From contig NC_092348.1 in assembly GCF_963676685.1 (NCBI RefSeq), positions 71,052,001 to 71,116,000 of the forward strand: 64,000 nt of DNA, read 5' to 3'. The notes beneath the pieces are model-generated. The model did no database searches and was not told where the DNA came from. It was given only the letters and a program-made list of their open reading frames with translations. The position numbers and the translations under genes are program-made. Origin of the DNA: Mytilus edulis (lineage: Eukaryota). Shown here in pieces: positions 27,151-47,087 of this stretch; position 1 is the first letter of the stretch, and each line of letters opens with the position of its first letter.

Positions 27151-27206
27151 TCAGTTTCCCTGTGTCCATTGTTTTGAGTCGTTTTCATACACTTTATTTT
27201 CAGCGT
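27151..27206 (-). CDS. Gene B probable terminal exon (DAENKVYENDSKQWTQGN*)
   Basis: tatttcag acceptor, phase 1, YEN motif, TGA at 27151-27153, AATAAA at 27119-27124. Confidence 0.7.
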
Positions 27207-30200
27207 CTGAAATATATATAACATGTCATATAACAATCTTAAACTGTCTTTGCCAAATTTTGAGTCAATTTGAAAAGAAAGATAAATTCGCCGTCAACAT
27301 GAAACATAGTTCTTTTGACCTTATTTTCTGTAAATTAACCTGCCTATCATGAGAACAACTTTGTCTGAGGTGTAGCTGCATCTGTAGTTTCCATATGATT
27401 AAAAATTTATTAACGGAAAATTCATGAAAGTTATGTTATCAATCATTTTAGAAACTTCGTACTGAGTTGATTATACCCTCTTGGAAAAACAACTAATCAG
27501 CAGCGGAATTGAAACGGTTTGAAATAATAAACAAAATAATAATAAAAAAAAGTAAATGATTTGCAAATCATGATTTATTTCTAGTGGTTAACATTAATAA
27601 TATTACAATAATTGTAATCAGAATAGATAATTGATAGGAATTCTTGCAATTCCTAAAGTTTTTTTTTATTAAACTGCAGACTTACTTCAATGCCATTACT
27701 ATTGTCAAATATAAACGTCTTTCCTAATTCTTTACACAATACGTTCTAATAATTACATGATGTGCTTTAATTTTTTGCATATATGTGTTCTTTTAGCAAC
27801 CATAGAATACAATAGCTTTAGAAATACATTTTTTTTTTATCATAGATGACTCACCCTCATTTATTAAATCATCGTAAACAGTGGGGTTGTTTTTCAAACC
27901 AAGATCCTCATAATGTTGTGTCGGGCTAAAATGAAATATTAAGATGTATTCACTTAGATATTAGATATATTTATGTAATCACAATGTACTAGTTTGGTCA
28001 ATTGAATTGAAACTTTGCTTTGACAAAGATTTTATTAATTACATATAATCGAGTAACTGATTTTTTTTTATTGAAATGTTAACCATTGATAGGATTATTT
28101 TTTGTGGTTTATACTGAATGTTTTTTTGCAAAACCAATCCATTAAATCTTCTTTCTCAGAAATGAATTACAAATATTACCTATTAACTGTGGTTTCTCCG
28201 CAATCTGTAATGAATAATAATAAGAATGAAGCAAACAACATTTATTGTTGGCTTTAGATGAATTTGGCTTTTTATTTTAGGCATTTTTGACATATAGCTC
28301 TTCAACGGTTTCGGTACTTATACATCTTCGGATTTCTTATGTTTGGCTTTGAGCGTTCCTGATGAAGGTAAAATCCAGAAAAGCGCTTCGGACGTAAGAA
28401 ATTATTAAACGTGCTGTTTTTAATTTGTTATTGGAGAAAACAATTTAAACTTGATAAGAATTCGCCTGTTTAAAGTGCTTTCTAAAACTCACTTCAAAAA
28501 CATAGCATTCAAAAACAATGAAGAATTACATTCACAATACCAAGACAAGACCAATTCACTATTTGTTATCCTTTTTTGTACCATTTTTCAATTGCCAAAT
28601 TATAACTTCAAAATATGCATCAACAGTTTCAATTTATGTCTGTCATGACTATATAATTTAAATATACCCCAAAATCGTCCTACCTTCACCTTTCAAATCA
28701 TCATAAACATATGCTGCGTTCTTTCGACCAAGATCTTCATAATGTGCTCCAGAGCTGTTAATTAATGCAAAAATCTCATAGATTGAGAAGAAAATCAGTG
28801 AAACAAATAAAATTAGAGTATCGCATGAAATATAAAAGGACCGAGAGTTCGTCGACAGAATAAATTTCTGCGTATGCATAAGTCCTTTCTTAGTCATAAT
28901 CACATTCGGGAATATGACACACTAGCTATAGGTAAAATTGCGTACCATACGACTATTCTACTGTATTATGTTATATGACTGCAAAATATGTCGATAATAA
29001 GGTGAGATACAGACGTTATGGAATCGTTGATTGTTATGGAATAACCGTTTCACAAATGATATCGGATATGTTCCTTACGTCGTAACTACAATCCCCTTCC
29101 CTTTCATATATGTGACTTACCGAATTAGACTATTTACCGGATTGATTATAACATAAGCAACACGACGGATGCCACATGTGGAGCAAGATCTGCTTACCCT
29201 TCCGGAGCACCTGAATTCACCCCTAGTTTTTGGTGGGGTTCGTGTTGTTTATTCTTTAGTTTTCTATATTGTGTCATGTGTACTACTGTTTGTCTGTTTT
29301 TCCTTTTCTTTTTTGGCATGGCGTTGTCAGTTTATTTCGATTTATGAGTTTGACTGTCTATCTGGTATCTTTCGTCCCTCTTTTAGAATCATTTGGAACA
29401 TGTGAAGGTCGTACAACTGTTGGTTACTGCAATCATCAAGTTTGCATATATTTTAGTTTGAAGTCTTTCATATGTGTCATCATCGCGGAAAAGTCAAGAT
29501 AAGAAGCAGACCTCCTAGTTTTGGTAGAATTCTCAATTTTAAGTAAAAGTTCTTACGATGTTTGAGAATGTCTTGTTTCCATTATGCATAATAGTTGTAC
29601 AAAAATTATTCGGCAACTAAGGGTACACAATAATTGTCGGTGTGTTTGATTTTTGGCCTCAGTACGGCTATTAAAAGTAATATTTGACCTAAAATGAAAT
29701 TTACAGCTACAATTTTAATTTGTTAAAGAGCTGTTCAAAGTTACGATGTTTTCGATCTGTCCAAGTGCATCATAATGTTTTGATGCGCTGTTACATTTAT
29801 CAAAAGACTATAGAATAGATAATTTTGAATAAATGGTATACCTACTTTTTGGAATTTTGGATCCTCAATGCTCTTCAACTTTGTACTTGTTTGGTTTTAT
29901 TAATATTTTGATATAAGCGTCACTGATGAGTCTTATGTAGAAGAAACGAGCGTCTGGCGTACTTAATTATAATCCTGGTACCTTTGATAACTAGTACTAG
30001 TTTATTGCAAATACTGATAATATCTTTCTGTTATTATTGTATAGTCTTACTCCTAACTTAATATATTTGTCGGATTTTGATTGGCTAACACACGTTGTTA
30101 TTATACCCATAGCCTCAGATGTTGTTAACCCATATACTCGAACGTTGATTCCATGTACCCTGGGAAATGTCATGCGCATTTTCGATGGTTTTCCATGTAT

Positions 30201-33200
30201 TGAGTTCTGTAGATTATCCAGGATATCAGTTAGTAGATAAATCCACTTACGAATTTATCTTAATTAGTCAATCATTTGCAGTAAATTTAGGAAATGCATC
30301 ACTTGAATACCACATCGTTGTCAGTTTCACGGTCTCTGGATTTAAAACGTCTTATATTTGACTACCTGTAGTTATCTAACATATCTAGCTTCTTACATAT
30401 CTTTAAAAATGTGTCAAATTTTAAAAAAAAAAGCGTTTTAAAATGATAAAAAAGCTTTTACGTTAAAGTGTGTGCTCAAATTTATCAAATTTGGACTTAG
30501 ATCGGGGATAGGTTCGTTATCTACGTTCATATCCGTAGATATGGTACGATTATCGAATTGATATTTAAAAACAAAAGAAATTCAGTTTACTGAAAGAGAA
30601 AGTGGGAATAGTGTATGAATGTAAAGAAGTAGCAAATAATAAAACATCTTTATCTTTGTTCACTCAAATGTTAAAGTGGTCTAAAGCAGGCCTTTTAATT
30701 ATTCTTTTATTAATGGTTCAAAGAAATTAGAAATTACCTTGAATCTTCGTTTTCCTGTGACGCTGTAAAGTAAAATAAATAACGTATTGTATCAAATTCA
30801 GGTGTTACTTAAACTGAATATGCCCATATTTACATACGTCGTGTTCCTTAATATCTATTAAATCACAGAAATAAGGCAATTCAATTGCCGGCGCGCAGGA
30901 TAATCATACGAAAAGTGATAGATCACATAAGAAATTCAAAGGAACTTAGCCTGTTATAAAATTTAGATGATTTTCGTCTCTAATTCACCTCATTTCCTTG
31001 TTGGTCTCGTGGTAGCGTGCTCGCTTCGGTTAGAGTGACATTTAAGTTAAAACTGTGGCTCAGTGTTTCAGTTTAGTACAAATAGATATAAGAATATGTG
31101 GTATTAGTGCCAATGAGACAACTCTCCAAACAAGTCAGAATTAAACAAGTGAACCATCATAGGTAAAAGTACCGTCTTCAACACGGAGCCTGGTTAATCT
31201 AAATTAAAATATTTAACGTCAAACTGACAGATTTTTATTGAATAATACAAGGGATATAATTTCCTCTGTTCCATTGCTCAGTGGGAAACAATTTTCTAAA
31301 TAGTACCCTGTAATGCAGACCAATCAAAAATCGATAATTCAAAGGACAATGAAGTTAATCTACATCAATAAATCAAAGACAATCATCATGGCCTTTATTT
31401 TGGCCTCAAAACAACGTTAAGTACGTAGACTGTCAATAAAAAAGAAAATGTCTTGCTTCCAATTTGGTTTTTTTTGTAATAGCTGTTCCGTTGGTAAGTG
31501 AGTGACGTAATCGTTAAGTAGTTTCAAAATAAAATTTTACAGTAAAAGACAATGATGATAGAACATTCAGTGTGATAAATTTAATTACACATAGTTGAGA
31601 GAGTGATAGAGCAGATTGCATGGTATCCCTCGGAAAAGCATTTACAACCTCGCCTTCTCCTCAGTTGACAATGTATCATCGCTATAACAATCTGCTCTAT
31701 CACCCTCTCAGCTTTGGTTATTTATATAATATCACATAATCATACTCTTGTCCCTAATACGCGTTATATTTGCCACCAGACGTTAAAGATTCATCTATCC
31801 TCCCATCAATCCAGCTTACCTCATTAATTGTTTTTTTTTCAACAATAAACGAAATATATATATATTTTTCTTTTTTGTAAATAATATCTTTTGTATTGAA
31901 ACATTTTATAAAGATAAATGTGACATCACCTTTATCAGTTAAATCTTCATAAACATTAGGGGCATCTTTCAAACCCAGTTTTTCATAATTTCTTGAAGAG
32001 CTGTAAAAATAAATAAACAAACATGTTTGCCATTATGTAGTACAATATATGCTTCTATGTTTACCGAATATCGTAACTATCAGAAAACTGAATACAAATT
32101 CAATTAATTTATTTACATTTTTCAAGTATAATTCTGGAATTCAGAAACTCTATTCACATATATTTTTCTTAATGCTTTGCGTTTATCTGTTGACTTTGGT
32201 TCGTTTTTTGTTTATTTAGCCTCGATAAATTTCGTATATTCACACAACATTATTATATTTAACTGTTAAAATATATTTGTATCTATATGCCATATAACGA
32301 TGGAGAATGCTTAAAGGGAGAAAAAGGATAGAGACGAAAACATAAGTTCGGTCTACAGAAGTACATCCTTTTTCAAGTCTTAAAAAAAACGTACAAAAAA
32401 GAATGATATATAAAATGTTTCGATAAAATAGTACCATACCTTAGGTCTTTGTTTGCATATGGTGCTGAAAAATACAAAACAAATAAATCACTTCATTACA
32501 TGTAACATAAAACAGATATGGTTACTTTAATAAAAGAGGTCAGTGTTACGTACCTGATTAACCGTATTTTCTAGTTCTTTAGTACAGAAGCATTTGAACA
32601 ATCAAATAATATCGATCTATTATCAACAAGGAAAAACTCATCAAGGCTATGAAGTATCTTGAACTGGCAAGAAATATTTGTAAACAAGAATGTTCGGTGT
32701 TCAAAAATTCACTTTTAATCTCAGATAATAAAGTAGCAGCGGATATAGAGAAGAACGCGCAGTTCAAAATAAGTTATTTCTGTCAATTTCATATATAGAG
32801 CATTTGAATGAAATGCCTTTTTATATTGAATAAGTGAAGAATTATATACATTGATTATTGTGTGTTGACTAAAATATTTCTTTTGAATAAGCACAGCAAT
32901 TTTTTATCAATTGTTTTCAGAAAAATAGATTTAAATACCATTGATCTCACCTTCATTGCTCAAATTGTCATAAGCATTTGGGACATCTTGCAGACCAAGT
33001 GTCGCATAATGTTTCGTCGGCCTGAAACAAAAATGAATACAACATAAAATACAAAATGAAATGTAAGTCTTTGTGTTGTTTCAGATTCCTCAATTTTTGA
33101 AAAAGATAACATACAAATAAACTTAATATTATCAAATTTAAACACTACTGATAAAAGCACATTGTAAGAAATATTTGTTTGTCTTCATAGTATTCGACCA

Positions 33201-36200
33201 AAATACGTCACTACCTTAACTGCCTACAAATAGTTACTGTAGTGATCACATTTGGACCAAGTTGTCCAAATTAATAGCTTTTGTCCTTGCTCAAGGATAT
33301 GGACATACATTGTGTGCCTCGGTTGTACAGTTTGCGAATGTGTGATATACTTTTTCTACATATAGTTTTAATAGGTTCACAAAACAAAATGATTAATCCA
33401 CAGCACGTAGCTCCCCTAAACGTTATTAAGTGTTCGGACATTAAAGGAATATACTTTTCAATATCAGTGGTAATTTCTGTTATCTGCTGTAAGTACTATT
33501 TTCTTTTTAAATTGAGCAACAGGAAAACTATTCATCCGTTTTAAAAAGGGAGGATATCTAATTAAAAATGTCATACCTTTGATCTCTGTCTTTGTTTGAA
33601 GCTGTTAAAACACAAATGCAATATTTCAATGCAAAACAAAATTTAACTGACAAACAATTTACATTTAGCCTTATTGTACGTCAGGGATGTTAAGAGTTGT
33701 CACTCAAAAGGTTGATAAAGATACAGTATAGGTAAAATAAGCCACCATCATCATCTATAATAGCAACTGTCTTTGCATAGTTGATAAGTGTACCTATACT
33801 GAATACAACTTTATAGTATCTATTCCTCTTCGATTGAAACAACTACATAAAACCTTTATAAGAGTTCTAGTTCCCATACAAAATTTACTTGTCTATTGTA
33901 CACTGTTTCGTTGCATGTTGTTCGCGTATTGTCCTCTCTTTAAAGTTTTTACTATCCTTGTGACTAATTTGAGGACAAAACATGTACAGTTTAGTGTGCA
34001 CAAATAATGAGAGTGTAATCTATGACTGCGTGTGATTTAATGGTTAACTTTTTACTGATTTGCTGCGTATGCTGTTTTGAGAATTTATTGATAATTCAAT
34101 TATAAACGATTGCAAATTTATAAATATGTCATAAATTTGTTTATTTTATTCATACCATTTTGTGTACCGCTACTGTTTTGTACTTCGTCATAATTGTGTG
34201 TGTGATCATCAGAATCAGTCTTTTCAAAGGCCACTGTGCTGAAAATGTACAAACATTATTTTAATAGACTTTTGTGTTTTTTGTTTTTACCACAACTAAG
34301 TAACATGCATGATATCTAGTCTACAAAGAATAAAATAAACTAGTGGCATACAACTGATGCATTTTTTAAAAAGTGTATGTGAATTCTTTTTTCTTTTTGT
34401 TTGACGATATGAGGTTTCAAAACAAAACAAAAACAAACGTCTCTTATTTGTTCTTGGTCAATATGTATCTTAAATTATAAAATTTCTAATTAATATATGT
34501 TTTATAATACGTACTAGCTGTGACGAAATAGTTCACAAAAATGTTGAACTAAATAAGGCACAGCAATTGTTTGACAATTTCATGAATGTGGCAGTATATA
34601 TTTTACGCGGTTTGAAAATAAAACTATTAGACTTTTCTTGCCTACAGGTATTGATATTTTTCATCATCATTTGTCTGTGTTAAATTTCAAACGAACTTAC
34701 GCTTCACATCGTTGATGCCCTGAAAAATGTATAAGATGGATGTGAAATCCTTAGTAATATATTTTAATTCCTTAAGCAATCAGGACGAAACAAGTTAGCT
34801 TCTTCATTCGTGATATTTGATTCGAGCGTCACTGTTGAATTGTTTGTACAAGAAACGCGGGTCTACTATAACAAGTTTAAGTCCTCCTGATATCTTTGGT
34901 CAATGTATTTTATATGAAAATAAAACTATATAAGATAGGTGAAAGATGCCAAAAACTCATTCAAACTCATCAGTTGAAAAAAAACCTGACAATGCCATGG
35001 TAATACAAGATAAAGGTCAAAAGATAGAGATAGATGTTCTGCTACCGACGCTATTTTCGGAACCAATTAATGGGTAAATAGAAAAGCCGTATTTGGCTCA
35101 TCTGTTTTGAATTTTTGGTGGCAAAGCTATTCAACTTTATACTTCTTTGTATTTCTAACTTTTTATTATCTGAGCGTCACTGATGAGTCTGATAAAGACG
35201 AAACGCGGGTTTGGTGTATCAAATTATAAGCCGGTTACCTTTTATAACTGTATCAGCGTTACCTATTGTTTCGGTTGGGTTTTTCTTCTGGTACTTGCAT
35301 TGTTGTCACTTTGCAACGTGCCGATTTAAATTTCGTCTATGTGTAAAATTTGTTAGTATATCATTACAACCTTCGTCCCTCATTATTCTTCATGAGTCTC
35401 GATTAATTTTAGATGCTAACCATGTAGACAGAACAAAAGCTAAAATGATGATTGGCACGCTACGTAATCGTTTGATAAAAACATTTACTTTGTTTGATGT
35501 ATAAAAAGCACTATATATTAAGCATCACAAAAGCCGACTTGAACAAGTCTTACCTTTCCGTCTCTTAAAGATTATCAAGACCAAAACCACCATTAAAACA
35601 ATTATAGACACCAGACTCCCGCACACAGCACCAATAATTACACCTGATGACATTGTTTCTGGTTTTATTGTTGAAGCTTAAACAAATTGAAAAAGATATT
35701 ATCAAAGAATCACATTAATGTTCACGTTATATAGGGTACATGTATATATCCTATGACTTTATCTAAACTAACAGTTTGCAAATAATGTACAGGTTACAAT
35801 GTATATGACAAGGTGTTACTTTGATGAAATTTCGGAACACGATGTAATCTTAAATTCTTCAAGATATTTTGTTCAATGAATTTCCACAATTTTCAATTGC
35901 CAACAGGTCTTCAATGCAACGAGAAATTCCCGCACCCGGAGGCATCCTTCAGCTGGCCCCTAAACAAGTATTTACTTTGACCCTTTGACAAAAAATTTCA
36001 AAAAATTAGAACCAATCAATTTATCAGAAAAATTACACTGGTTTTATAGCAGTTTGAGACAAACACTAATTTTGATCATTGAGAAGCTTCATATTCCCTT
36101 AACAAACAACATATTTAAAACTTTTAGCTGATTTTACAGAGTTATCTCCCTGTAGTGTTCGGTTCCAACTTAAACGGGTTTTGATAAATGACCTGTTTTA

Positions 36201-39200
36201 GGCGATTTTGGCTGTTTTCATAATAGTACAGAACTCAAGGAATTAAAATCATTATCGTATTAATCAATATAATCAATAAGTTAATAAAGTCAACTGAATA
36301 TTTGTTTAGGAATAAACTCTGCAGCTTTATTAATACAAGTAATTTATTTTCAAAAATGGTGCGAAATAGCACTTTAATTTGATCTTTGCAGGTGAAATGA
36401 TAATCGAGCGATGCATTTCAACATTATGTGTTAAAAAAAAGTCGACCAATTTTGATTTCTATATTCCTGCATTAAAAATACTAAATTCAATGCTAATAAT
36501 TATCGAAAGCCAAAACTTCACTATATACATGACCATATCGATTCAACTGAAACGAAAGTACATTCCACTTCAATTAGCCAAATACGCATTATCAAATTCG
36601 TTCAATTTGTAACTACGAAAAATTCGTACATCAAAAAAAAAGTTTTTCTTTTACTAAATGCATATGCTCTCTAGGTTATAGTGATATTGGTTGAATAAAA
36701 TGTACTTTTTGTTGATGAATGTGTTACATTCCGGTATGAACAAACTACCTAAAAATAATAAGAAGAAACTAGTTGATTTCGTTAATTTTGATTATTTCTT
36801 TTAAAGATATAGTATGAACTTTATTAATCTATATCCATAGAATAAGTTAATTATGTCTTACTTGATAGTCCCAACACTACAGTGTGTTCTACAGATTGCC
36901 CAAAACCATTTTCCAATATTAACGTATAGTTAGTGAAGTCCTCCTTTGTTAAATCATTCACTGTTAAAATTGATTTATAGCCATTAACTGTTACAGTCTT
37001 TCCATGAAAAACATCTTCAACCTCGGCCGAGGATTCCGAAACAAAAAATTTAGTTGATGTTTGAATCTGTTTTCCTTTATTGAACCAAGCATTGTAGATG
37101 AACTTAGGAACACTAAACACGTGAGCAACTATGTCAACATGTTTCCCAATCTCTCCATACTGTATATTTCTTTCATCATTGTCTGCAGTAAATACTGGTT
37201 GTGCTGTATAAAGAAAATAGGTATCAAAGACTCATTAGTGACGACAACATAAAAAAAATGATGGAGCCTCTGAATGTATGATAATCCTGTAATTGTGTTT
37301 ACCCAGCATAAGAACAATCACTAACCTTTCTTGTTGTCTTAGAACGTGAACGATAGTGGACCTATATATGCAAAATGATATGCTAGTTTTGTATATTGTG
37401 TTTTGTAGTCTGTAACGATTTTTTTTTTTGTCTTTTAACTATAAACATTGATTGCAATTAGCAAATCCTTGCATAGCCGTTTTAAAAGATGAGTATCAAT
37501 TTCAAGATAATGAAATAAATTGTTGTTCTTCAGTTGAGTATAATATTTAAAAAACAATTATACGCGAGCAGTTAGAAGCATTTGCAATACCAACTTTTTT
37601 CATGAAATATCAACTATACATACCATAAACAGTAATTTTAGCCGCTCCTTGGCGCTTCTCCACACCATCCGTTCCTTGAATATCATTACTAACTGTACAC
37701 ACATATTCACCGTTGTCTTGATATCTCAATGATATTGGAACTACAGGCAGTGTCAAGATAGTGTCCCCGTCCAGTTCCCGAATAATTCGTCCATGCAAAG
37801 ACCTATGCTGCCACTTATAAAATGTGTATGTATCGGGATAACCATCAGCTGTACAATTTATTGTTCGTGTTAGATCTGTCATTTCATAGGTGACATTAGA
37901 AACTGAAACATCTGGAGGAACTGTAAGACATTAAATTGAAATTCGAAGAACCTATTACACCACTTTCAAATGTTGTTCGTATGAATCTAACACACAGTTT
38001 TAATATACCTTCGAATACCATTCTTTATCAAATAGTTTGTTCCTATATTCTATTACATCCTCTATGACGCAAAATTTAGTGATTGATGTTTCGAATAAAC
38101 TAGTTAAAAATTCGAATGAATTCCTTTAACCTATTTATTCTTGTAACGATTTGTAATACACTTGTTTTATAAAATTGTTCGAAACATGTTTACTATCACT
38201 GCCTGTATTTTTAAATTCAACACACAAACTCATAAAACATACAAATGTTATTTTGTTTCTGTTTAACAATCTTCCTTTTCTAATCACGCGTACATAGGCT
38301 GCCACAAAAGTATCATGCTACCATAAATACAGTGACTGATAACACATTCATAACTACTAAAAGAAAACAGAATGAGACAACTCTTCACAAGAGACCAAAT
38401 GACACAAAAAGTGTCAACTTTAGGTCACCGTTTACTAGGTTTAATGGCTGTTTATGTTAGCAAGAACGTTCCATTCGTGATTTTTCTTTTAACAAATATT
38501 ACAATAACTCGTCATTATGGATTAAATTTGAATGATCTGTAAAGTTTTTACAAATTAAAAAATATCGAACATATCAAATTAAAGAACTGTATTGTTAAAT
38601 AACTTACATCGTACAAATAAATTTATCTGGTTTGAAAATCCTCCTATTGTGTTGTTCGCTGTACATATTATCGGTTGTAAGTTGAATTTCCTGTCCACCG
38701 TATATGTTAACGTGGAGGTCACCGTGAAAGTTTCATCAACACCTTGAGTTTCATGTGATGATGCTGTACTTGTTACATCAGTTTGGCCTATCGTCCACCA
38801 AATGGTGGCAGCAGGACGGCTTCCATTTGATGTACAAGAAATAGAAAATGGTACCATTTCTAATGTATTTACAAGTGATGCACTGAACACTGGCATTAAA
38901 GGCATTACTGAAATTGATAAAGTGTAAGATTCATCATTGACTTTTAACAAAAATCGATACTCATATCTGCCTGTACAAGCATCTGCTTATGACCAGGTGT
39001 TCTGCATATCAGTTATGTTTAATACGGACTACAAGTCACAATTTGACGCTTTTTGATGTGTGGACGAAGGTAACGAGTCAACAGAAAAGTGTCATAGTGT
39101 GTAATCAAACAACTGATATATCAGGGTTTCAGTATGATATGTGTCTGATAACTTATTTAAAGTATTGTATATGTTATTATGTGTATCTGGAGATAAAACA

Positions 39201-42200
39201 ATAGCATTATAAGACGAATTTATAACATGTATAAGGATTCAGGGGTTCCAAGATCAAACCATCTGTCGTATTTTGAAATGTTTTTTTTTATCGAAAAGGA
39301 AAGTAAAAGTAACTATATGTATGTAAAACTTATATATGTTCTAAAAGTTGAAATTGTAAAATGTTCAATATAAAGAAGTAAAAACACTACCCGAATTTGT
39401 AGAATTCTTTATCAGAAGATATTCCATTGTGATTCGCCACTGATGGGGAGTGTATTTTAACTTTATTCATTGAAGCGAACTAAAATTAAGAAAAATCTTA
39501 TTTCAAATTTGCGAAATGATTGTTAACAGAATATTAGTTTAATATCGAATATGTCATGTATGTCTCACCAAAATATGGGCAATGTTTAAAATAGTTGCAT
39601 TGAAAGAAAAACACCTACATGGTTTTCAACCTTTGTAATGGTAATAACGCATATCTAGGTATCTTTCATAGTTCAAATTACTTTTCTAATCTTTGTAAAA
39701 TAGCTATATATCCCTTTAAAGTGTTAAATATCTCGAGTTTTTCATACAATATTACTTTCCTTCAAGTAGCAACCTCAAGGAACTAACCCATAGGGTTGAC
39801 AATTTTGTTTATTTATTACTTCAATGTTCCATAATTGCATACTATTCCTTATTGAATATTGGCACATATAATAAATGATGAATTAATCAAAATTAACAAA
39901 ACAAAAAAGTAATTGAAAGTGTTTGCATTGATAAATCAGCACAAAAATATCAAAATATCAATATAAAAAGTAACCGACTTCTAAATGTAGTACTTTGTGC
40001 TAACAATTAAAATTTGATTTAAATGTTATTCTTCGTCATTTTGTTCGAGATTGATCAGGCATATTCAGATAGCCTATTATAGAAATAAATTGATACCTAC
40101 GATAAAGGTTTATTACAGCAGTAGTTTTCATTGGAATATCCAAAGCGTCACTGTTTGCTTCACATGAAACATGTGTTGTATCATAAAGTCTCGGTATGTT
40201 TCGCAAAATGTATCGCAACTCTTGGACACCAGTGTGGACAGTTGTTTCAAGAACTACAAGAGATAAAGTAGGAGCAGGAATTCCCCCAGTAGCTACGCAT
40301 TCAATGAGTAGATCCTGTCTTTCTGTACCAGTCAATATATTATCTGTTAAGGCGTTTCGAATTATTAAACTTTTTGGAAGCTCTAAAATAGAACGATTAA
40401 TTAATTTGTGTGTACATGCAGTTTCATATGTAACTGGTTGAATGTAACTACAAAATGCTTAAATATAAATGTATATATATAGAAACCACATTTTCTATTA
40501 CTGTATTTATAATTGTATGATTCATTTCCACCAACTCAAATGTTGTGCAATGTTATTCATATGTGCTAGTTGGTATGCCCCCGATTAGTGTCTTTGTATT
40601 TAATATTTTATGAATCAAGATTTACACTTTAATGTGTTATGATTGCCAATAAAACTGTCAACCAGAGACCTAAACCCGGACGTCGATTTTAAACGGTTTG
40701 TTAAGTACTTTAGTTTATTAACTATCATGTTGATTACATAAGAAATCACATAGAAAGTCAATGTCCCTCTCCCTAAGTCAAACATGACTGGCTGTTTTGT
40801 TCAAGTTCCGTTTTGGTCGTATAAATATTCAAATATGTTTTAATTATCGACCTTCAATATTCTCTTTAGTGTTACTGAGATAAGAGAAATCCAGAACGCC
40901 CGTGGACGCACGTTTCTTTGAATATGCATTCATATTGGAATTTAATGGAATTTAACTATTTGTTTTATTCAAAAAGTATTTAAATTTGGATTGTTTATCT
41001 AACTTTCTGTTAAAAATTAAAATCGAGAAAAAAAATGACAAAACAAAACTGTAGCTATACATTAGTAAACAAAATAAACGTAAGGATTTCGTTTGACAAA
41101 TTTGTAGTGCTGTTTGATTACCAAATTATTGAAAGGTGTTTGTCCTTTAAGTTATATTTCCTAATTTATTTGACTGGTGAGCTGTACTATCTGTTTATTT
41201 TCCCTTTAGTTTTTCGCTGCTTTTAATTATGTCTGATACTAATGATACTAATGATATTTTCCCAACAAATACCCCAGTGACATGAACCATGCATTTTGCT
41301 CACCATACAAAGTCAACTGTAAGAAGTATTCGTCAGTAATTCCTCCTCTGCACCTGTAAATCCCCTCATCAACAGGTTGAGTGTTCACTACATGTAATCT
41401 GTAGTACAGCCCAGTATTAGGATTGGCTGATGTTTTGTACTTTGTATCATTAATAGTTACATACTGATTAGCGATTACAGACCATCCCTCAATCCCATTT
41501 TTGGACCATATCAGTCTTGCATTTTCAATACTACACTGTAGAACTGACTCGTGTCCTCGTTTAACATATTGTTGAAAGGGATCCAATACTGTACCTGTAC
41601 CAGTTGCATATACGTCTGTTAAAAATATACCTACAAAGTACAATAATCATCTGATGGGAGTGAAATGTGGAAATGTTATAATTGTTAGTCATATAATTTC
41701 TTGTTGGTTTGTACACAGGTTCTGTGGAGTTCTTTGTGTCATTCATGAATGATATTGTTTTAAATAATAATTTTGCATTTTTCAAGTTTAGTTCTCACTG
41801 TTGAAATGTGTGTTTGGTTTTTATTTTGTTGAAATGTTGCTTCATCCGCACTAATTTCGTTGCCATTTTTCGGATGGTATGATGAACAATAAACAAACTG
41901 GTCAAAAGAGAGAAGATAAAGTAGTATACATTAGAGAAATCATCTCGAAGTGCATTCGCTTAAGCCGTAAACATATGAATGTCTACCACAAACCTACACA
42001 CGCGGGTTACTACATATATCTTTGTGTTTACATTATGAACACCTGAAGTATTGACATTTAAAAAAAAACATTTAATTTGTTGACACATATTGATTTCATA
42101 ATTATATTGATAAATGATGCATATATACATTTTATATGAATGAATTTCGGAAGATTTGAAGTCCTAAAAAATATCTGAAAACAAAAACTTCACTTTTTTT

Positions 42201-42427
42201 AAATGCGTATTTCATGTTATTCAATTTTGACCAAATTAAGGCAAAAGTAGTTTACCGATGTTTAACTCTCTTAAATCGATCAAAAAGACAAATCAAGGTT
42301 ACAAACATAAGATAATTGTAGTCCCATAATATGTCGAACTCAAAAAGGAGCGAGCTCGCCTGAATGGTACATACTTACTGCACACCATTAAAAGTAAACC
42401 AGTCAAATAGGAGATTGCAAAATCCAT
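27151..42427 (-). CDS. Gene B (complete, about 753 aa): Ig-superfamily type I receptor, leader + 5 Ig domains + TM + 4 ITAM-like repeats + terminal YEN motif
   Basis: 18 exons: 42379-42427, 41304-41630, 40101-40382, 38608-38907, 37624-37920, 36862-37203, 35554-35676, 34701-34719, 34156-34238, 33577-33601, 32951-33021, 32440-32464, 31930-32000, 30738-30762, 28684-28754, 28180-28204, 27855-27925, 27151-27206. Total 2262 nt, open throughout. Confidence 0.92.
27855..27925 (-). CDS. Gene B exon 17, ITAM-like repeat 4 (SPTQHYEDLGLKNNPTVYDDLINE)
   Basis: 71 nt, catttttag-type acceptor, GTGAGT donor. Confidence 0.87.
28180..28204 (-). CDS. Gene B exon 16, 25-nt spacer micro-exon (DCGETTVN)
   Basis: ttacag / GTAATA, phase 1-2. 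Confidence 0.75.
28351..28395 (+). ncRNA. Minimal hammerhead ribozyme motif, second subfamily
   Basis: GCGUUC-CUGAUGA-AGG(uaaaau)CCA-GAAA-A(gcgc)UUC-GGACGU; palindromic loop 3. Confidence 0.6.
28684..28754 (-). CDS. Gene B exon 15, ITAM-like repeat 3 (SSGAHYEDLGRKNAAYVYDDLKGE)
   Basis: 71 nt, taacag / GTAGGA. Confidence 0.88.
29018..29382 (+). repeat. Dispersed repeat, possibly a retroelement 3' fragment
   Basis: Inverted copy at about 15520-15760; absent from paralogous intron in gene A. Confidence 0.65.
29916..29960 (+). ncRNA. Minimal type I hammerhead ribozyme motif (stem II mismatch)
   Basis: GCGUCA-CUGAUGA-GUC(uuaugua)GAA-GAAA-C(gagc)GUC-UGGCGU. Confidence 0.7.
30738..30762 (-). CDS. 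Gene B exon 14, 25-nt spacer micro-exon (ASQENEDS)
   Basis: tttacag / GTAATT. Confidence 0.8.
31930..32000 (-). CDS. Gene B exon 13, ITAM-like repeat 2 (SSSRNYEKLGLKDAPNVYEDLTDK)
   Basis: 71 nt, ttttacag / GTGATG. Confidence 0.88.
32440..32464 (-). CDS. Gene B exon 12, 25-nt spacer micro-exon (APYANKDL)
   Basis: tttttcag / GTATGG. Confidence 0.8.
32951..33021 (-). CDS. Gene B exon 11, ITAM-like repeat 1 (RPTKHYATLGLQDVPNAYDNLSNE)
   Basis: 71 nt, ttgtttcag / GTGAGA. Confidence 0.88.
33577..33601 (-). CDS. Gene B exon 10, 25-nt spacer micro-exon (ASNKDRDQ)
   Basis: ttaacag / GTATGA. Confidence 0.8.
34156..34238 (-). CDS. Gene B exon 9, cytoplasmic, single YDEV motif
   Basis: 83 nt, ATVAFEKTDSDDHTHNYDEVQNSSGTQN. 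Confidence 0.85.
34701..34719 (-). CDS. Gene B exon 8, 19-nt micro-exon (GHQRCE)
   Basis: tttttcag / GTAAGT. Confidence 0.82.
35172..35217 (+). ncRNA. Minimal type I hammerhead ribozyme motif (best-preserved copy) in a dispersed repeat
   Basis: GCGUCA-CUGAUGA-GUCU(gauaa)AGAC-GAAA-C(gcgg)GUU-UGGUGU: core, stem II, short stem III, stem I pairing. Confidence 0.75.
35554..35676 (-). CDS. Gene B exon 7, transmembrane exon
   Basis: 123 nt, TSTIKPETMSSGVIIGAVCGSLVSIIVLMVVLVLIIFKRRK. Confidence 0.92.
36862..37203 (-). CDS. Gene B exon 6, Ig domain 5 (cysteine-less)
   Basis: 342 nt phase 1-1; about 84% aa identity to gene A exon 6. Confidence 0.92.
37624..37920 (-). CDS. Gene B exon 5, Ig domain 4
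   Basis: 297 nt; about 89% aa identity to gene A. Confidence 0.95.
38608..38907 (-). CDS. Gene B exon 4, Ig domain 3
   Basis: 300 nt; about 85% aa identity to gene A. Confidence 0.95.
40101..40382 (-). CDS. Gene B exon 3, Ig domain 2
   Basis: 282 nt; about 68% aa identity to gene A. Confidence 0.93.
41304..41630 (-). CDS. Gene B exon 2, end of leader + V/I-type Ig domain 1
   Basis: 327 nt; LQC..W..DEGIYRC; about 57% aa identity to gene A. Confidence 0.95.
42379..42427 (-). CDS. Gene B exon 1, signal peptide (MDFAISYLTGLLLMVC)
   Basis: 49 nt, ATG to GTAAGT, phase 1, hydrophobic. Confidence 0.87.
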
Positions 42428-42466
42428 ATGCACGTATAAAATTCTTCTTTGCAATCTATTTTTTAA

Positions 42467-42475
42467 ACTTCCTGT
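42467..42475 (-). promoter_or_regulatory. Putative ETS site ACAGGAAGT upstream of gene B
   Basis: About 40 nt upstream of ATG; changed to ACAAGAAGT in the orphan copy (46739-46747). Confidence 0.45.
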
Positions 42476-43614
42476 TTGCACTTTAAATATAAAATGTCAG
42501 ACACACATATATACTACACAAGTGTTATTCATAATAGAATTAGTTTAATCTGTTACGATCTTATTTAAGAGGAATAGATAAATACATCATACATTAAATA
42601 GATAAGGAAACAATTATTAGTGGTGTATGCATTGAAAACACATCAATGAGAGGCCCATAATGCTTGCCGAAACCATCTTTATTGTCATCACATGCAAGTC
42701 CCTATCAGTCCTTTAAAAAAATCCGTCCAATAGCAGCTAGGTCTTTGGACTAAATCTGAAATATCCAATTAGATGTTGACAGACTTCAGAAACAAATTAA
42801 GAGTGTCTGCTTCATTTGTTTGGTATTTTTATTAAAGTTGACTTATCGGGGCCTTTTAAAGCTGACTTTGCGGTATGGGCTTTGCTCATTGTTGAAGTCC
42901 GTACGGTGACCTATAGTTGTTAATTTCTGTGTCATTTTGATCTTTTGTGGATAGTTGTCTCATTGGCAATCATACCACATCTTCTTTTTCTATATAAAGC
43001 TCGGTGGAATAATAACGGTTAGGGATTTTCTAGATGTGTTGGATACTATTTGGTAGGCTTGGAATGTTCTTTGCTCTTTAGTTAAATTGTTGACTCTTTG
43101 ACACATTCTTCCGTTTCCAATCTCATTTATTTTTATATAATAAGTATGACAAAATCAACGATTTAACATTTCTTATCGTTCACCTCCGATTCTTGAGTAT
43201 ACCGGCGTACAAGCATAGTTTTTTTTTCTAGCGTAAGATACTTACTTTCATCAGTTGACAAATATTATATTGCCGCGTTTAAAAGTGTGTTTGAAATTTT
43301 CAACTTAACTCTTTTCAAAATCATTACTTTCGTGGATTTACAAGTTAATGGTAGGATATTTACTAGAGCTAAATAACTCGCGAATATATCATAAAGGCCT
43401 TAAAACATGATATTATATATTTGCATATTGTAACTTTGTCTGATTTAAATATTTATATCCGAGTTTTTTTTTCTTCTTTTAATAATTGCGAAATAATGAC
43501 GAAATATTCGCCTTTTTTACTGGAATAGAGTGGACTAACTAATGACAAAAAACAAAGGATATCAAATGCGTCAAAAGAGAAGTATTAAAATATGAAACGT
43601 ATTGCAAAATATAA

Positions 43615-44720: not shown

Positions 44721-46651
44721 GTTGTTCTCTTTTTTAAATATCAGATTTTTGGTGAACTCGTTTTACATTTTTGTCACTTTTCATATGCCTTTATATATGT
44801 AGCTTACTATATTATGGTTTCAGTACATTGTTTTGTTGTCGTTCTGATCTTCGGTGGATACTTTTCATAGTAGTAATTATAACCATACCACATCGTTTTA
44901 GTATTATATATCAAAATCAATTGGAAAGAGCTTATAATTTATAATTCCTTGATATATTATATTCCGTGATTAACCTTAAAATAGACATCGATTTAGACTG
45001 GGAACAGTATATCTAAGGTTAATTTATATGTTCCTGATCTAGTTATGTTCAAAATATGCGGTTTCAATGTGTGCATGTCTTAATATGTTTGTCAAGAAAC
45101 ACTAAAATATTTAATGTGACAGCCAAAAAGGGACAGAAACACGATAAGATATATACATGACAAATAGTGTTGAAAACAATATAGCAAATATAGATTGGAT
45201 GAGGAAACTGTAATTTTGTTAATTAGTATTTATAACATTTATGTAATATTGAACTCGGTCATTATGACGCAATGTATCACGTCACATCCAGATATACTTT
45301 CCCAAAATCACAAATAACTACATGTAGGACGTGTAAAAGTATATATATATATATATAAAACAGTCGTTTTTAGTACAAATTCACACTATAACATTTTAAA
45401 AAGTACTATTAGCAGTGAGAAATTTACAAAGCGGTAGGGTAATGTATTGTGTTTTCTACTGTCAAAATGTTAGATATAATATACTGCATGAAATAAAACA
45501 CCATGCAGTCAACTTTTGTCTTATCATCATGTTCTACTTATTACAAAATCTGAATTATAATGTTAATGCACATTTGTATGTCTAAACGGCCTCAAAATGA
45601 GAAATTAATTCTGCTATGGCATAAATCAAACTCTTCTTGTTGTTTTAACGATAGAGTTGGTTGAGGCATAATTGCTGTTTCGACCATAGAAACTATATTA
45701 TAAAATTTTGTGAAAAATTAAATTTGGGCAAACATTGGAAAGAGGCATTTCGAAAGTTAAAATCTTCAGAGCAAATTCAGAATTCAAAATTCAAACAGCA
45801 TAATTATGTAAATATCTGAACTTAAAAAACGTTAAGTACTTTATATCAAAATTTAAAATTGATTGACTTCAAAAGAACTGATGATATCTTACTATAATTT
45901 CAGTCTAAAAAAAAACGTTTGCGCCTGTTAAACCGGCTGTGTCTTTTTTACCTTTCGTGACATTTTTCCTATATATATGCCATCGCCTCGGACCTTGACC
46001 TGACTACTCGCGTAGAAAAACTATCTGGCAACGGTTGTTATCGGACTGTTTCTTGGTAACCTATGTATTGTATCTAATACATACATTTGTTGTATCATTG
46101 GCACTCATAACACATCTTCCTATATCTATTTGTATTGGTAAATGATGTATATATACATTTTATTTTGAATAAATTTTGGAAGATGTAAAATCCTATAAAA
46201 TATTTGGAAAAAAGAAATTCTTCTTTTTTAATGCGTATTTCATATTGTTCAATTTTGACAAAATTAAGGCAAAAGTGGTTTACTAATAATCAATTCTCAT
46301 ACATTCATCAATAATTAAGACATATAAAAAAAAGTAACATGTGCTAAAAAAGGAGCGAGATTGCGTGCGTCGATATGGTATGCATGTGCGTTGGATGCGT
46401 CGATATGATGTGTCCCAAGTTAGCATTGTCAGTAGCCTCCGGACTTTGTTAGTCTTCAATAAAGTTGTATGATTTTTAATTTTAGTTCATTTATAAGTTT
46501 TGGAGTTTATTATGGCGTCCATTATCACTGAAGAACTAGTATACAATTTGTTTAGGGGCCTTTGGTTAGTTCCAGTCTGCTCGTTGGTGGGTTTGTTGTC
46601 CCATTGACACATTCCCCATTTCCATTTTCAATCTTAAAATATAATACTTAC

Positions 46652-46701
46652 TGCACCACATGAAAAGTAAACCAGTAAAGCAGTGGTTTGCAAAAAACCA
46701 T
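46652..46701 (-). pseudogene. Orphan duplicate of gene B leader exon with +1 frameshift
   Basis: Homologous to 42379-42427, keeps ATG and GTAAGT donor but is 50 nt (extra T in a T6 run); would otherwise read MVFANHCFTGLLFMWC. Confidence 0.75.
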
Positions 46702-47087
46702 ATGCACGTATAGATCTTCTTTACAATATGTATTTTAAACTTCTTGTTCGCACTTTAAAATAAAAAATGTCAGATAACACATGTACTACACAAGTGTTAG
46801 TCATAATAGAATTGGTTAAATGTAAATCAATCAAACAAGGAATAGATAAACACATCATACATAATATAGATAAGGAAACATTTATAACTATGCATTGAAA
46901 AGACACCAATAAGAGACCAACGCTAAAGTGGCAGACACCATCTTTCTTGGCAACCCATTCACGTCCCTATATCCGTCCTTAAATAATCCTTCTAATAGCA
47001 GGTCCCGGCCCATATTTGCGAGTTATTTAGCTCAATTTTATAGATATCTTACTTTCATTAGTTGTTGATGAATATGATAAGGCAGAG

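What the first reader, a model, noticed from the sequence alone, without database searches (positions are those of the whole stretch)
27151..42427. Single-chain invertebrate Ig receptor with four tandem ITAM-like motifs (a natural CAR-like design)
Seen: splicing the micro-exons gives a tail with YATL-x8-YDNL, YEKL-x8-YEDL, YEDL-x8-YDDL and YEDL-x8-YDDL at a 32-aa period, behind five Ig domains and a TM helix. Established: YxxL-x(6-8)-YxxL is the ITAM that recruits tandem-SH2 Syk/ZAP70 kinases. In vertebrates, multi-ITAM chains (CD3 zeta has three) are separate adaptors with almost no ectodomain. From memory, an oyster five-Ig receptor with an ITAM (CgIgR) has been reported and should be compared. 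Inference: this is an activating hemocyte immune or allorecognition receptor family with built-in signal amplification. The tail is nearly invisible to ORF-based annotation.
Basis: partly seen in the sequence, partly recalled or inferred. Interest (0 to 1): 0.92.

Follow-up and report, generated by a model that had tools for sequence, protein, structure and literature searches.

The report
Mussel Ig receptor with four ITAMs
A blue-mussel gene encodes a single-chain cell-surface receptor whose tail carries four textbook immune activation motifs (ITAMs), each built from a repeated pair of tiny exons. This is more ITAMs than any single vertebrate signalling chain has, and its function is untested.

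Summary
On the minus strand, 18 coding exons (42427-27151) encode a signal peptide, five Ig-size domains, a TM helix without charged residues and a 184-aa acidic tail. The tail holds YATL-x8-YDNL, YEKL-x8-YEDL, YEDL-x8-YDDL and YEDL-x8-YDDL exactly 32 aa apart. Each ITAM is one 71-nt exon preceded by a 25-nt exon.

- **Transcripts:** contigs from three studies contain all seven junctions in the stretch I could lay.
- **Public model:** the gene equals a RefSeq Mytilus edulis model misnamed "neural cell adhesion molecule 1-like", so it is not invisible to annotation.
- **Family:** it is one of four tandem paralogs with 4, 4, 4 and 5 ITAMs. Five Mytilus species have versions with 3-5 ITAMs. Scallops and other mussel relatives have one or two ITAMs in the same kind of exon.
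- **Selection:** all 34 tyrosines and 34 leucines in the 17 ITAM exons are invariant, and dN/dS is 0.19-0.39 for gene A against its paralogs (up to 0.89 between paralogs B and C, where dS is low).
- **Signalling partner:** the genome encodes a Syk-family kinase.

The activating, Syk-recruiting role is a well-founded inference, not shown. Hemocyte expression, ligand and allorecognition are untested. I found no paper describing this family. Verdict: a new variant of a known kind (ITAM-bearing invertebrate IgSF receptors such as oyster CgIgR). Other first-reader notes in this genome mention ITAM/ITIM tails on other DNA; I did not check them.

The parts
42379..42427 (-). Coding exon 1 (49 nt): start codon and signal peptide (MDFAISYLTGLLLMVCS)
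41304..41630 (-). Exon 2 (327 nt): Ig domain D1, membrane-distal. It is the most divergent between paralogs (54-56% aa identity; dN/dS 0.41-0.57 for gene A against B and C).
40101..40382 (-). Exon 3 (282 nt): Ig domain D2
38608..38907 (-). Exon 4 (300 nt): Ig domain D3 (Pfam C2-set_2)
37624..37920 (-). Exon 5 (297 nt): Ig domain D4 (Pfam Ig_3)
36862..37203 (-). Exon 6 (342 nt): Ig-like domain D5 (partial I-set match, no canonical Cys pair)
35554..35676 (-). Exon 7 (123 nt): stalk, TM helix with no charged residue and a conserved G-AVC-G motif, and the KRRK stop-transfer sequence
34701..34719 (-). Exon 8 (19 nt): micro-exon with the same phases as the 25-nt exons
34156..34238 (-). Exon 9 (83 nt): membrane-proximal tail with the single-tyrosine motif YDEV (Y[DE]EV in all relatives)
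33577..33601 (-). Exon 10 (25 nt): spacer micro-exon of cassette 1. It lies outside the stretch laid with reads.
32951..33021 (-). Exon 11 (71 nt): ITAM 1, YATL-x8-YDNL
32440..32464 (-). Exon 12 (25 nt): spacer micro-exon of cassette 2
31930..32000 (-). Exon 13 (71 nt): ITAM 2, YEKL-x8-YEDL
30738..30762 (-). Exon 14 (25 nt): spacer micro-exon of cassette 3
28684..28754 (-). Exon 15 (71 nt): ITAM 3, YEDL-x8-YDDL
28180..28204 (-). Exon 16 (25 nt): spacer micro-exon of cassette 4
27855..27925 (-). Exon 17 (71 nt): ITAM 4, YEDL-x8-YDDL
27151..27206 (-). Exon 18 (56 nt including the stop): C-terminal KVYEND (a YxN motif) and the stop codon
1..18882 (-). Tandem paralog B, collinear with the gene above. 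Its ITAM exons lie at 3771-3701, 2841-2771 and 262-192; a fourth ITAM exon and the last exon lie just outside the window.

Best explanation
**Shown.** This is an expressed, intact Mytilus edulis gene for a type I IgSF receptor. It has a signal peptide, five Ig-size domains, an uncharged TM helix and a 184-aa acidic, tyrosine-rich tail. The tail is modular: a membrane-proximal Y[DE]EV unit (19 + 83 nt), four ITAM cassettes (25 + 71 nt each, phase 1 to 1, so whole cassettes can be gained or lost in frame), and a C-terminal YEN exon. It is one of four tandem paralogs with 4-5 ITAMs. These sit inside a multi-megabase IgSF cluster whose other members carry a single ITAM in a homologous exon. The multi-ITAM tail therefore arose by tandem duplication of the cassette in the mussel lineage. 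Five cassettes are probably ancestral for the genus, with one lost in paralogs A to C.

**Inferred.** Ligand binding at the divergent distal domains clusters the receptor, possibly helped by the conserved GxxxG-like TM motif. A Src-family kinase then phosphorylates both tyrosines of each ITAM. The mussel Syk-family kinase docks through its tandem SH2 domains. Four or five ITAMs per chain raise the number or dwell time of bound Syk. Y[DE]EV (a Src-family or Nck SH2 type site) and YEN (a Grb2 SH2 type site) would add further docking. The output would be an activating signal such as phagocytosis or adhesion-triggered activation, as reported for the one-ITAM oyster receptor CgIgR.
For: - **Gene model:** the exon structure reproduces RefSeq protein P0154 exactly.
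- **Splicing:** seven tail junctions appear in contigs of three runs from three studies, with GT..AG ends. Four raw RNA reads show the 32002-to-32951 joint with a variant 25-nt exon between the two sides.
- **Family:** four paralogs carry 17 ITAM exons.
- **Selection:** every Y and L is invariant, and dN/dS is 0.19-0.39 for gene A against the others. Flanking introns are only about 68-76% identical.
- **Other species:** homologs with 3-5 ITAMs occur in M. trossulus, M. galloprovincialis, M. coruscus and M. californianus.
- **Ancestral module:** single-ITAM exons with the same acceptor offset and phases occur at nine other loci. Scallop relatives have 1-2 ITAMs plus a terminal YEN.
- **Spacing:** it is x8 in all 17 M. 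edulis exons, which fits a bidentate tandem-SH2 reader.
- **Signalling genes in this genome:** Syk-family gene at C1:95.99-96.03 Mb. Its N-SH2 exon best matches human SYK at 3.5e-17 and ZAP-70 at 1.9e-11. It also has a C-SH2 exon and a kinase with HRDLAARN, DFG and a DYY loop. SHP-2, CSK and PLC-gamma homologs are present too.
- **No adaptor needed:** the TM has no charged residue.
- **Precedent:** oyster CgIgR (five Ig domains, one ITAM) binds CgSyk and drives ERK and phagocytosis (PMC6994640).
Against: - No tissue, cell type or protein-level data: hemocyte expression is unknown, and depth in the one raw RNA run is very low.
- No phosphorylation or binding data.
- The acidic residue at position -3 of the extended ITAM consensus is absent in all four ITAMs of gene A.
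- The tail is acidic (pI 4.65), unlike the basic, membrane-associating CD3 tails, so regulation may differ.
- The ectodomain's nearest relatives are adhesion molecules (nephrin/SYG-2, DIP, nectin, DSCAM). RefSeq names it NCAM-like or IrreC-like.
- Overall dN/dS of D1 is below 1, so diversifying selection is not demonstrated.
- The link between the tail and the Ig exons in one transcript rests on gene models, not on reads I laid.
Confidence: 0.6

Rival explanations
1. It is a nephrin/Kirrel-type cell-adhesion or morphogenesis receptor. The tyrosine motifs would serve other readers than Syk: AP-2 YxxPhi endocytosis signals, or Nck, PI3K or SHP-2 docking. The ITAM resemblance would then be a by-product of repeated YxxL motifs.
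For: - The closest non-bivalve hits are nephrin, SYG-2, DSCAM and hemicentin-like proteins. The best PDB hits are DIP-theta, SYG-2, neurotrimin, nectin-1 and CADM4.
- The membrane-proximal YDEV resembles the Nck-binding YDxV sites of nephrin (from my own knowledge).
- RefSeq names these genes NCAM-like, IrreC-rst-like or nephrin-like.
- No expression evidence places the gene in hemocytes.
Against: - Single YxxPhi or Nck sites do not need a fixed partner tyrosine. Here the pair and its x8 spacing are invariant in all 17 exons and in orthologs of five species.
- The module is one exon that has been multiplied as a unit.
- No FN3 domain is present in this subfamily.
- A Syk-family reader exists in the genome.
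Confidence: 0.22
2. It is an inhibitory or dual-function receptor. The ITAMs would act mainly in a partially phosphorylated state ('inhibitory ITAM') and recruit SHP-type phosphatases, so the multiplicity would buffer rather than amplify.
For: - An SHP-2 homolog with tandem SH2 domains is present.
- Inhibitory ITAM signalling and partially phosphorylated zeta chains are known in vertebrates (my own knowledge; PMC2195733 is listed but I did not read it).
Against: - No ITIM or ITSM consensus ([ILVS]xYxx[ILV]) stands out in this tail. The positions -2 of the tyrosines are mostly K, N, H or A.
- The only tested relative by architecture, CgIgR, is activating.
Confidence: 0.08
3. It is a non-functional or artefactual gene model: a decaying duplicate whose tail exons are spliced only by chance.
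For: - The neighbouring paralog B has a truncated RefSeq model.
- Paralog D has a stop inside its last ITAM exon.
Against: - The 753-codon frame across 18 exons is intact.
- Spliced contigs come from three studies.
- The tail and D3-D5 are under purifying selection.
- The gene is conserved in five species.
Confidence: 0.02

Closest known systems
CgIgR, the 'BCR-like' receptor of the oyster Crassostrea gigas (PMC6994640)
   Same: Both are bivalve type I receptors with five extracellular Ig domains, a TM and a tail ITAM with x8 spacing and LG after the first YxxL (published motif YTELGQCDPETPYEKL). CgIgR was reported to dimerise, bind CgSyk and promote ERK phosphorylation and phagocytosis.
   Different: CgIgR is described with one ITAM; this gene has four and paralogs have up to five. 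The micro-exon cassette structure was not described for CgIgR.
CD3 zeta (CD247) and other ITAM adaptors (FcR gamma, DAP12, CD79)
   Same: Several canonical ITAMs sit in tandem on one disordered tail (zeta has three). The expected readers are Syk/ZAP-70 tandem SH2 domains.
   Different: Those adaptors have almost no ectodomain, a charged TM residue and disulfide-linked dimers, and they need a separate ligand-binding chain. Here the ectodomain is about 540 aa and the TM is uncharged. The tail is acidic, not basic. From memory, vertebrate ITAMs are split between two exons; here both YxxL halves lie in one 71-nt exon. No sequence match to these chains was found in the PDB search.
Fc gamma RIIA (CD32A) and other single-chain ITAM receptors of vertebrates
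   Same: An Ig ectodomain, TM and its own ITAM on one polypeptide, with no adaptor needed.
   Different: Those receptors have one (atypically spaced) ITAM and two Ig domains. They are not homologous by any search here.
Hydractinia Alr family (PMC9546547)
   Same: A clustered, expanded invertebrate IgSF family of single-pass receptors. Some have ITAMs (some overlapping) or ITIMs in their tails. Syk and Shark homologs are in the genome, and a role in allorecognition has been proposed.
   Different: It is a cnidarian family with one to three domains and very diverse tails. No regular array of 4-5 canonical ITAMs or a micro-exon cassette is described.
Nephrin / SYG-2 / Kirrel (IrreC-rst) adhesion receptors
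   Same: There is distant ectodomain similarity, including a C2-set_2 domain (SYG-2 at 2.3e-07 in PDB; nephrin-like names on relatives). The tail has a tyrosine motif of YDxV type.
   Different: Nephrin has eight Ig domains plus FN3 and no ITAM. This subfamily has five Ig-size domains, no FN3 and 4-5 ITAMs.
Drosophila Draper
   Same: An invertebrate phagocytic receptor with an intrinsic ITAM read by a Syk-family kinase (Shark); cited in PMC9546547.
   Different: Its ectodomain is EGF-repeat, not Ig, and it has a single ITAM with longer spacing.

Membership tests
ITAM-bearing immunoreceptor | YxxL/I-x(6-8)-YxxL/I motif | tested here: met
   Four motifs, all with x8 spacing. All 17 exons of the four paralogs keep both Y and both L.
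ITAM-bearing immunoreceptor | Motif lies in the cytoplasmic tail of a membrane protein | tested here: met
   A hydrophobic TM of about 28 residues followed by KRRK lies upstream. The ITAMs are at residues 621-732 of 753.
ITAM-bearing immunoreceptor | Acidic residue at -3 of the first tyrosine (extended consensus D/ExxYxxL) | tested here: not met
   The residues before the first Y are PTKH, SSRN, SGAH and PTQH. This feature is not universal among accepted ITAMs.
ITAM-bearing immunoreceptor | A Syk/ZAP-70/Shark-type tandem-SH2 kinase is available in the same organism | tested here: met
   Locus C1:95.99-96.03 Mb. The N-SH2 exon best matches SYK at 3.5e-17. A C-SH2 exon and a tyrosine-kinase domain with a DYY loop are present.
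ITAM-bearing immunoreceptor | Both tyrosines are phosphorylated and bound by the tandem SH2; signalling depends on them | not testable with these tools
   This needs biochemistry. Complex prediction was not run because the Syk SH2 module is available only as separate exons.
CgIgR-type bivalve IgR | Five Ig domains, a TM and an ITAM tail | tested here: met
   compared with the description in PMC6994640.
CgIgR-type bivalve IgR | Sequence homology or orthology to CgIgR | not testable with these tools
   The CgIgR sequence or accession is not held and no supplement text is available. Its motif string is absent from all proteins held (P0001-P0166). A profile search reached no oyster protein.
CD3 zeta / FcR gamma adaptor family | Minimal ectodomain, charged TM residue, pairs with a separate ligand-binding chain | tested here: not met
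   The ectodomain is about 540 aa with five Ig-size domains, and the TM is uncharged. No PDB sequence hit to these chains was found.
NCAM (the RefSeq name) | Five Ig domains followed by two FN3 domains | tested here: not met
   Pfam finds Ig families only in P0154 and no fn3. FN3 is present in the single-ITAM relative P0163.
Nephrin/SYG-2/Kirrel IgSF adhesion family | Significant ectodomain homology and the family's domain count | tested here: inconclusive
   The matches are weak: SYG-2 at 2.3e-07 and DIP-theta at 6.2e-09. Nephrin-like proteins appear at 1e-14 to 1e-21 in the profile search. The domain count differs.

The most novel reading that the evidence does not exclude
The four multi-ITAM genes would be the activating arm of a polymorphic cell-cell recognition system of mussels, for self/non-self recognition or defence against transmissible neoplasia. 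They sit in a multi-megabase IgSF supercluster analogous to the vertebrate LRC/NKC. Ligand specificity would come from swappable, fast-evolving distal domains. Signal strength would be set genetically by 3-5 cassettes and post-transcriptionally by skipping a 25-nt micro-exon, which frameshifts and truncates the tail, as in the M. californianus X2 model. A dimer of the five-ITAM form would present ten ITAMs, the number found in a whole TCR-CD3 complex.
Probability: 0.12. Interest if true: 0.92.

Novelty: new variant of a known kind. Interest (0 to 1): 0.7.

Why it matters
ITAM multiplicity is a long-debated feature of antigen receptors: why ten ITAMs in the TCR, three on zeta? CAR engineering now varies it deliberately. 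In this family, evolution has varied ITAM number (1, 2, 3, 4, 5) on otherwise similar single-chain receptors, using a clean in-frame exon cassette. That offers a natural series for testing what ITAM number does to Syk recruitment, threshold and output.

The family also extends the evidence for ITAM-Syk signalling in lophotrochozoans beyond the single oyster case. It shows that automated names (NCAM-like, CEPU-1-like, IrreC-like) hide a probable immune-type receptor family in mussels. Mussels are noted for disease resilience, gene presence/absence variation and transmissible cancers.

Tried and rejected
1. **Finding CgIgR.** The paper gives no accession in its main text and no supplement is held. 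Its motif string is absent from all proteins held. A profile of eight family members reached no oyster protein. A search for 'CgIgR' found only the original paper. Homology is left untested.
2. **Genome-wide degenerate DNA pattern for the ITAM exon.** Replaced by DNA and 23-aa exon searches.
3. **Literature search 'Mytilus, SYK, hemocytes'.** It timed out and I did not repeat it.
4. **Locating Syk.** The first tandem-SH2 candidates turned out to be CSK (C4:54.6 Mb), PLC-gamma (C5:47.77 Mb) and SHP-2 (C13:58.01 Mb). The Syk locus was found afterwards.
5. **ITIM-tailed relatives.** P0042 and P0172 are from an unnamed assembly. They have no close copy in this genome (best 55% identity on one Ig exon, no tail hits). 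A paired inhibitory partner is therefore not shown.
6. **Positive selection on D1.** Pairwise dN/dS is raised (0.41-0.75) but below 1, so no claim is made.
7. **Complex prediction.** Not run. The mussel Syk tandem-SH2 module exists here only as separate genomic exons.
8. **Searching a self-joined spliced model.** Searches used single exons by reference or database proteins. In one search a script joined only the stretch between two anchor residues around each intron and compared it with P0154.
9. **Cassette skipping in gene A.** No joint in the three contig runs skips a 25-nt or 71-nt exon. Two joints with 23 letters between the sides are variant 25-nt exons, not skips.

Full report
**What is there**

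Window bases 27151-42427 hold one minus-strand gene. ORF listing shows five Ig-size open frames, a TM frame and several short frames with paired YxxL motifs. A six-frame motif scan places four YxxL-x8-YxxL motifs on the minus strand at 33008-32961, 31987-31940, 28741-28694 and 27912-27865. Three more lie at 3758-202 and belong to a second gene.

Each motif sits in a 71-nt exon with AG and GT borders at fixed offsets: 13 nt before the first tyrosine codon and 10 nt after the last leucine codon. Such an exon starts in phase 2 and ends in phase 1. It therefore needs a 3n+1 partner, and a 25-nt exon with a strong polypyrimidine tract and a GTA donor lies upstream of each one. The last exon supplies KVYEND and the stop codon. 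Two more small exons (19 and 83 nt, same phases) lie between the TM exon and the first cassette and carry a YDEV motif.

**Is the splicing real?**

Assembled contigs of three runs from three different studies show joints 27206>27855, 27925>28180, 28204>28684, 28754>30738, 30762>31930, 32000>32440 and 32464>32951. All have CT..AC ends, which is GT..AG on the minus strand.

Single contigs run through several cassettes. One 361-nt contig runs from before ITAM 2 through ITAM 3 and ITAM 4 into the last exon. The runs are only guessed to be RNA, but intron-less joints at GT-AG borders are the mark of spliced transcripts.

Several exon pieces match with zero mismatches. The paralogs differ by more than 5% in those exons, so at least part of the signal is from this gene. 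The one run of raw RNA reads has very low depth here, but four reads show the 32002-to-32951 joint with a variant 25-nt exon between the two sides. Exon 10 and everything upstream were outside the laid stretch.

**Identity**

A search of the D3 exon against 1.84 billion representative proteins found a 731-aa M. trossulus protein with five Ig domains, a TM and four ITAMs. A tail-region search with that protein then returned P0154, a 753-aa RefSeq protein of Mytilus edulis named 'neural cell adhesion molecule 1-like'.

P0154 maps to the window exon by exon. A junction-by-junction check finds exactly one GT-AG solution per intron that reproduces it: 18 coding exons, 2262 nt. The window is therefore M. 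edulis chromosome piece C5:71052001-71116000.

It also follows that the gene is not invisible to annotation; it is only misnamed. Pfam sees Ig families only and no FN3, so the NCAM name fails on domain content. All searches used single exons by reference or database proteins.

**The family**

- **Four tandem genes.** They lie on the minus strand between C5:70.993 and 71.094 Mb.
  - D is P0153: five ITAMs, with a stop codon inside the last ITAM exon.
  - C is P0155: four ITAMs.
  - B has four ITAM exons, but its RefSeq model P0173, 'CEPU-1-like', stops just after the TM and lacks the tail.
  - A is this gene.
- **Fixed positions.** The cassettes are positionally conserved between paralogs. The extra third cassette of D is also present in M. 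trossulus, M. coruscus and M. californianus proteins. Five cassettes are therefore probably ancestral for the genus, with one lost in A to C.
- **Other Mytilus species.** Predicted proteins carry 3-5 ITAMs.
- **Truncated isoforms.** Predicted isoforms in M. californianus (X2) and M. galloprovincialis (X2) end early. The former skips a 25-nt exon and so frameshifts. This hints that micro-exon use could set tail length, but I saw no such skip for gene A.
- **Wider family.** An own-genome search finds hundreds of related Ig exons, mostly on C5 between 69.07 and 71.64 Mb. Nine further loci have a single ITAM exon with the same acceptor offset and phases, one codon longer at 74 nt.
- **Scallops.** Scallop 'nephrin-like' relatives have one or two ITAMs and the same terminal YEN.

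The module is therefore old, and its multiplication is a mussel-lineage event.

**Selection and chance**

- With the exon-border filter there are 17 motif hits on the minus strand of the 134-kb region, all inside the four genes. There are none on the plus strand and 0.18 on average in shuffles. The bare motif occurs about 30 times per strand by chance in this AT-rich DNA.
- All 34 tyrosines and 34 leucines of the 17 exons are invariant.
- dN/dS of the ITAM exons is 0.19-0.39 for A against the others, while flanking introns are about 68-76% identical.
- In the ectodomain dN/dS falls from D1 (0.41-0.57 for A against B and C) through D2 to D3-D5 (0.12-0.28).
- Paralog D has a D1 of a different type that does not align. 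Patchy dS between B and C suggests gene conversion.
- This is a distal-domain divergence gradient, not proof of positive selection.

**Mechanism**

Shown:
- the architecture;
- an uncharged TM with a conserved G-AVC-G motif;
- an acidic tail with 12 tyrosines (pI 4.65);
- a Syk-family gene in the same genome. Its first coding exon is an N-SH2 that best matches human SYK (3.5e-17) and then ZAP-70. It is followed by a C-SH2 exon and a tyrosine-kinase domain with HRDLAARN, DFG and a DYY activation loop;
- SHP-2, CSK and PLC-gamma homologs.

Inferred from established SH2 specificities and from the oyster CgIgR work (PMC6994640):
- clustering leads to Src-family phosphorylation of the ITAMs;
- Syk docks through its tandem SH2 domains, and four or five sites per chain increase the number or dwell time of bound kinase;
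- Y[DE]EV and YEN add Src/Nck-type and Grb2-type docking.

The strict x8 spacing of a tyrosine pair, kept as one exon and copied as a unit, is what favours a bidentate reader over endocytic or single-SH2 explanations.

**Comparison and novelty**

- ITAM-bearing single-chain IgSF receptors are already known in invertebrates. Oyster CgIgR has one ITAM, and the Hydractinia Alr family has some tails with ITAMs (PMC9546547).
- Vertebrate CD3 zeta has three ITAMs, but it is an adaptor with almost no ectodomain and a charged TM. The tests for membership in that family fail here.
- Full-text searches for Mytilus or bivalve ITAM receptors, and for four, five, multiple or tandem ITAMs, found only vertebrate TCR/FcR and CAR literature plus the two papers above. 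The library is open-access only, so absence is not proof.
- Relation to CgIgR by sequence could not be tested.

I class this as a new variant of a known kind. What is new is the regular array of four to five canonical ITAMs in cis with a large ectodomain, the 25 + 71-nt cassette that builds it, and the graded series of one to five ITAMs within one family.

**Limits**

No tissue, ligand, phosphorylation or binding data exist here. The tail-to-ectodomain link rests on gene models from five species rather than on reads I laid. 'Hemocyte', 'immune' and 'allorecognition' remain hypotheses.

Other first-reader notes in this genome mention ITAM/ITIM tails on other pieces. I did not check them, and they are not counted as support.

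Noticed in passing
window 57443-63372, + strand: A nuclear hormone receptor gene lies upstream of the receptor cluster. One exon holds a complete C4 zinc-finger DNA-binding domain (Pfam zf-C4, 3.6e-31). Later exons have weak ligand-binding-domain similarity.
   Followed up: partly
window 46127-47001 versus 42099-42736: A second copy (79-81% identical) of the gene's 5' exon and promoter region lies about 4 kb upstream, with no Ig exons behind it. It may be a remnant of a further duplication or an alternative first exon.
   Followed up: no
window 8859-12865 (paralog B); RefSeq protein P0173: The RefSeq model of paralog B ('protein CEPU-1-like', 371 aa) covers only D3-D5 and the TM. Intact-looking D1 and D2 exons and four ITAM exons lie in the genome around it. 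The public model is probably incomplete.
   Followed up: partly
G000:C5:70993162 region (paralog D, outside the window): The last ITAM exon of the five-ITAM paralog has TAG where the other paralogs have GAG. The protein therefore ends right after the fifth ITAM and loses the C-terminal YEN exon.
   Followed up: yes
window 29026-29385, 29844-29993 and 31083-31128 (introns): Dispersed repeats inside the tail introns reach very high depth in all RNA-type runs, with many loose ends. The same elements recur elsewhere in the window. They are expressed or abundant repeat families, not part of the gene.
   Followed up: no
paralogs B and C, D3 and D5 exons (window 10559-12865 and L002): Synonymous divergence between B and C is very uneven: 0.04-0.08 in D3 and D5 against 0.37 in D4. 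This suggests patchy gene conversion between neighbouring paralogs.
   Followed up: partly
G000:C1:95.99-96.03 Mb, C13:58.01 Mb, C4:54.60-54.61 Mb, C5:47.77 Mb: Loci of the mussel Syk-family kinase, SHP-2, CSK and PLC-gamma homologs were located while looking for ITAM readers.
   Followed up: partly
proteins P0042, P0172 and P0166 (unnamed assemblies): Related IgSF plus FN3 receptors from another, unnamed bivalve-like source carry tails rich in ITIM/ITSM-like motifs such as VYADV, LKYADL, TVYSDI and SAYEDI. No close copy exists in this genome.
   Followed up: partly
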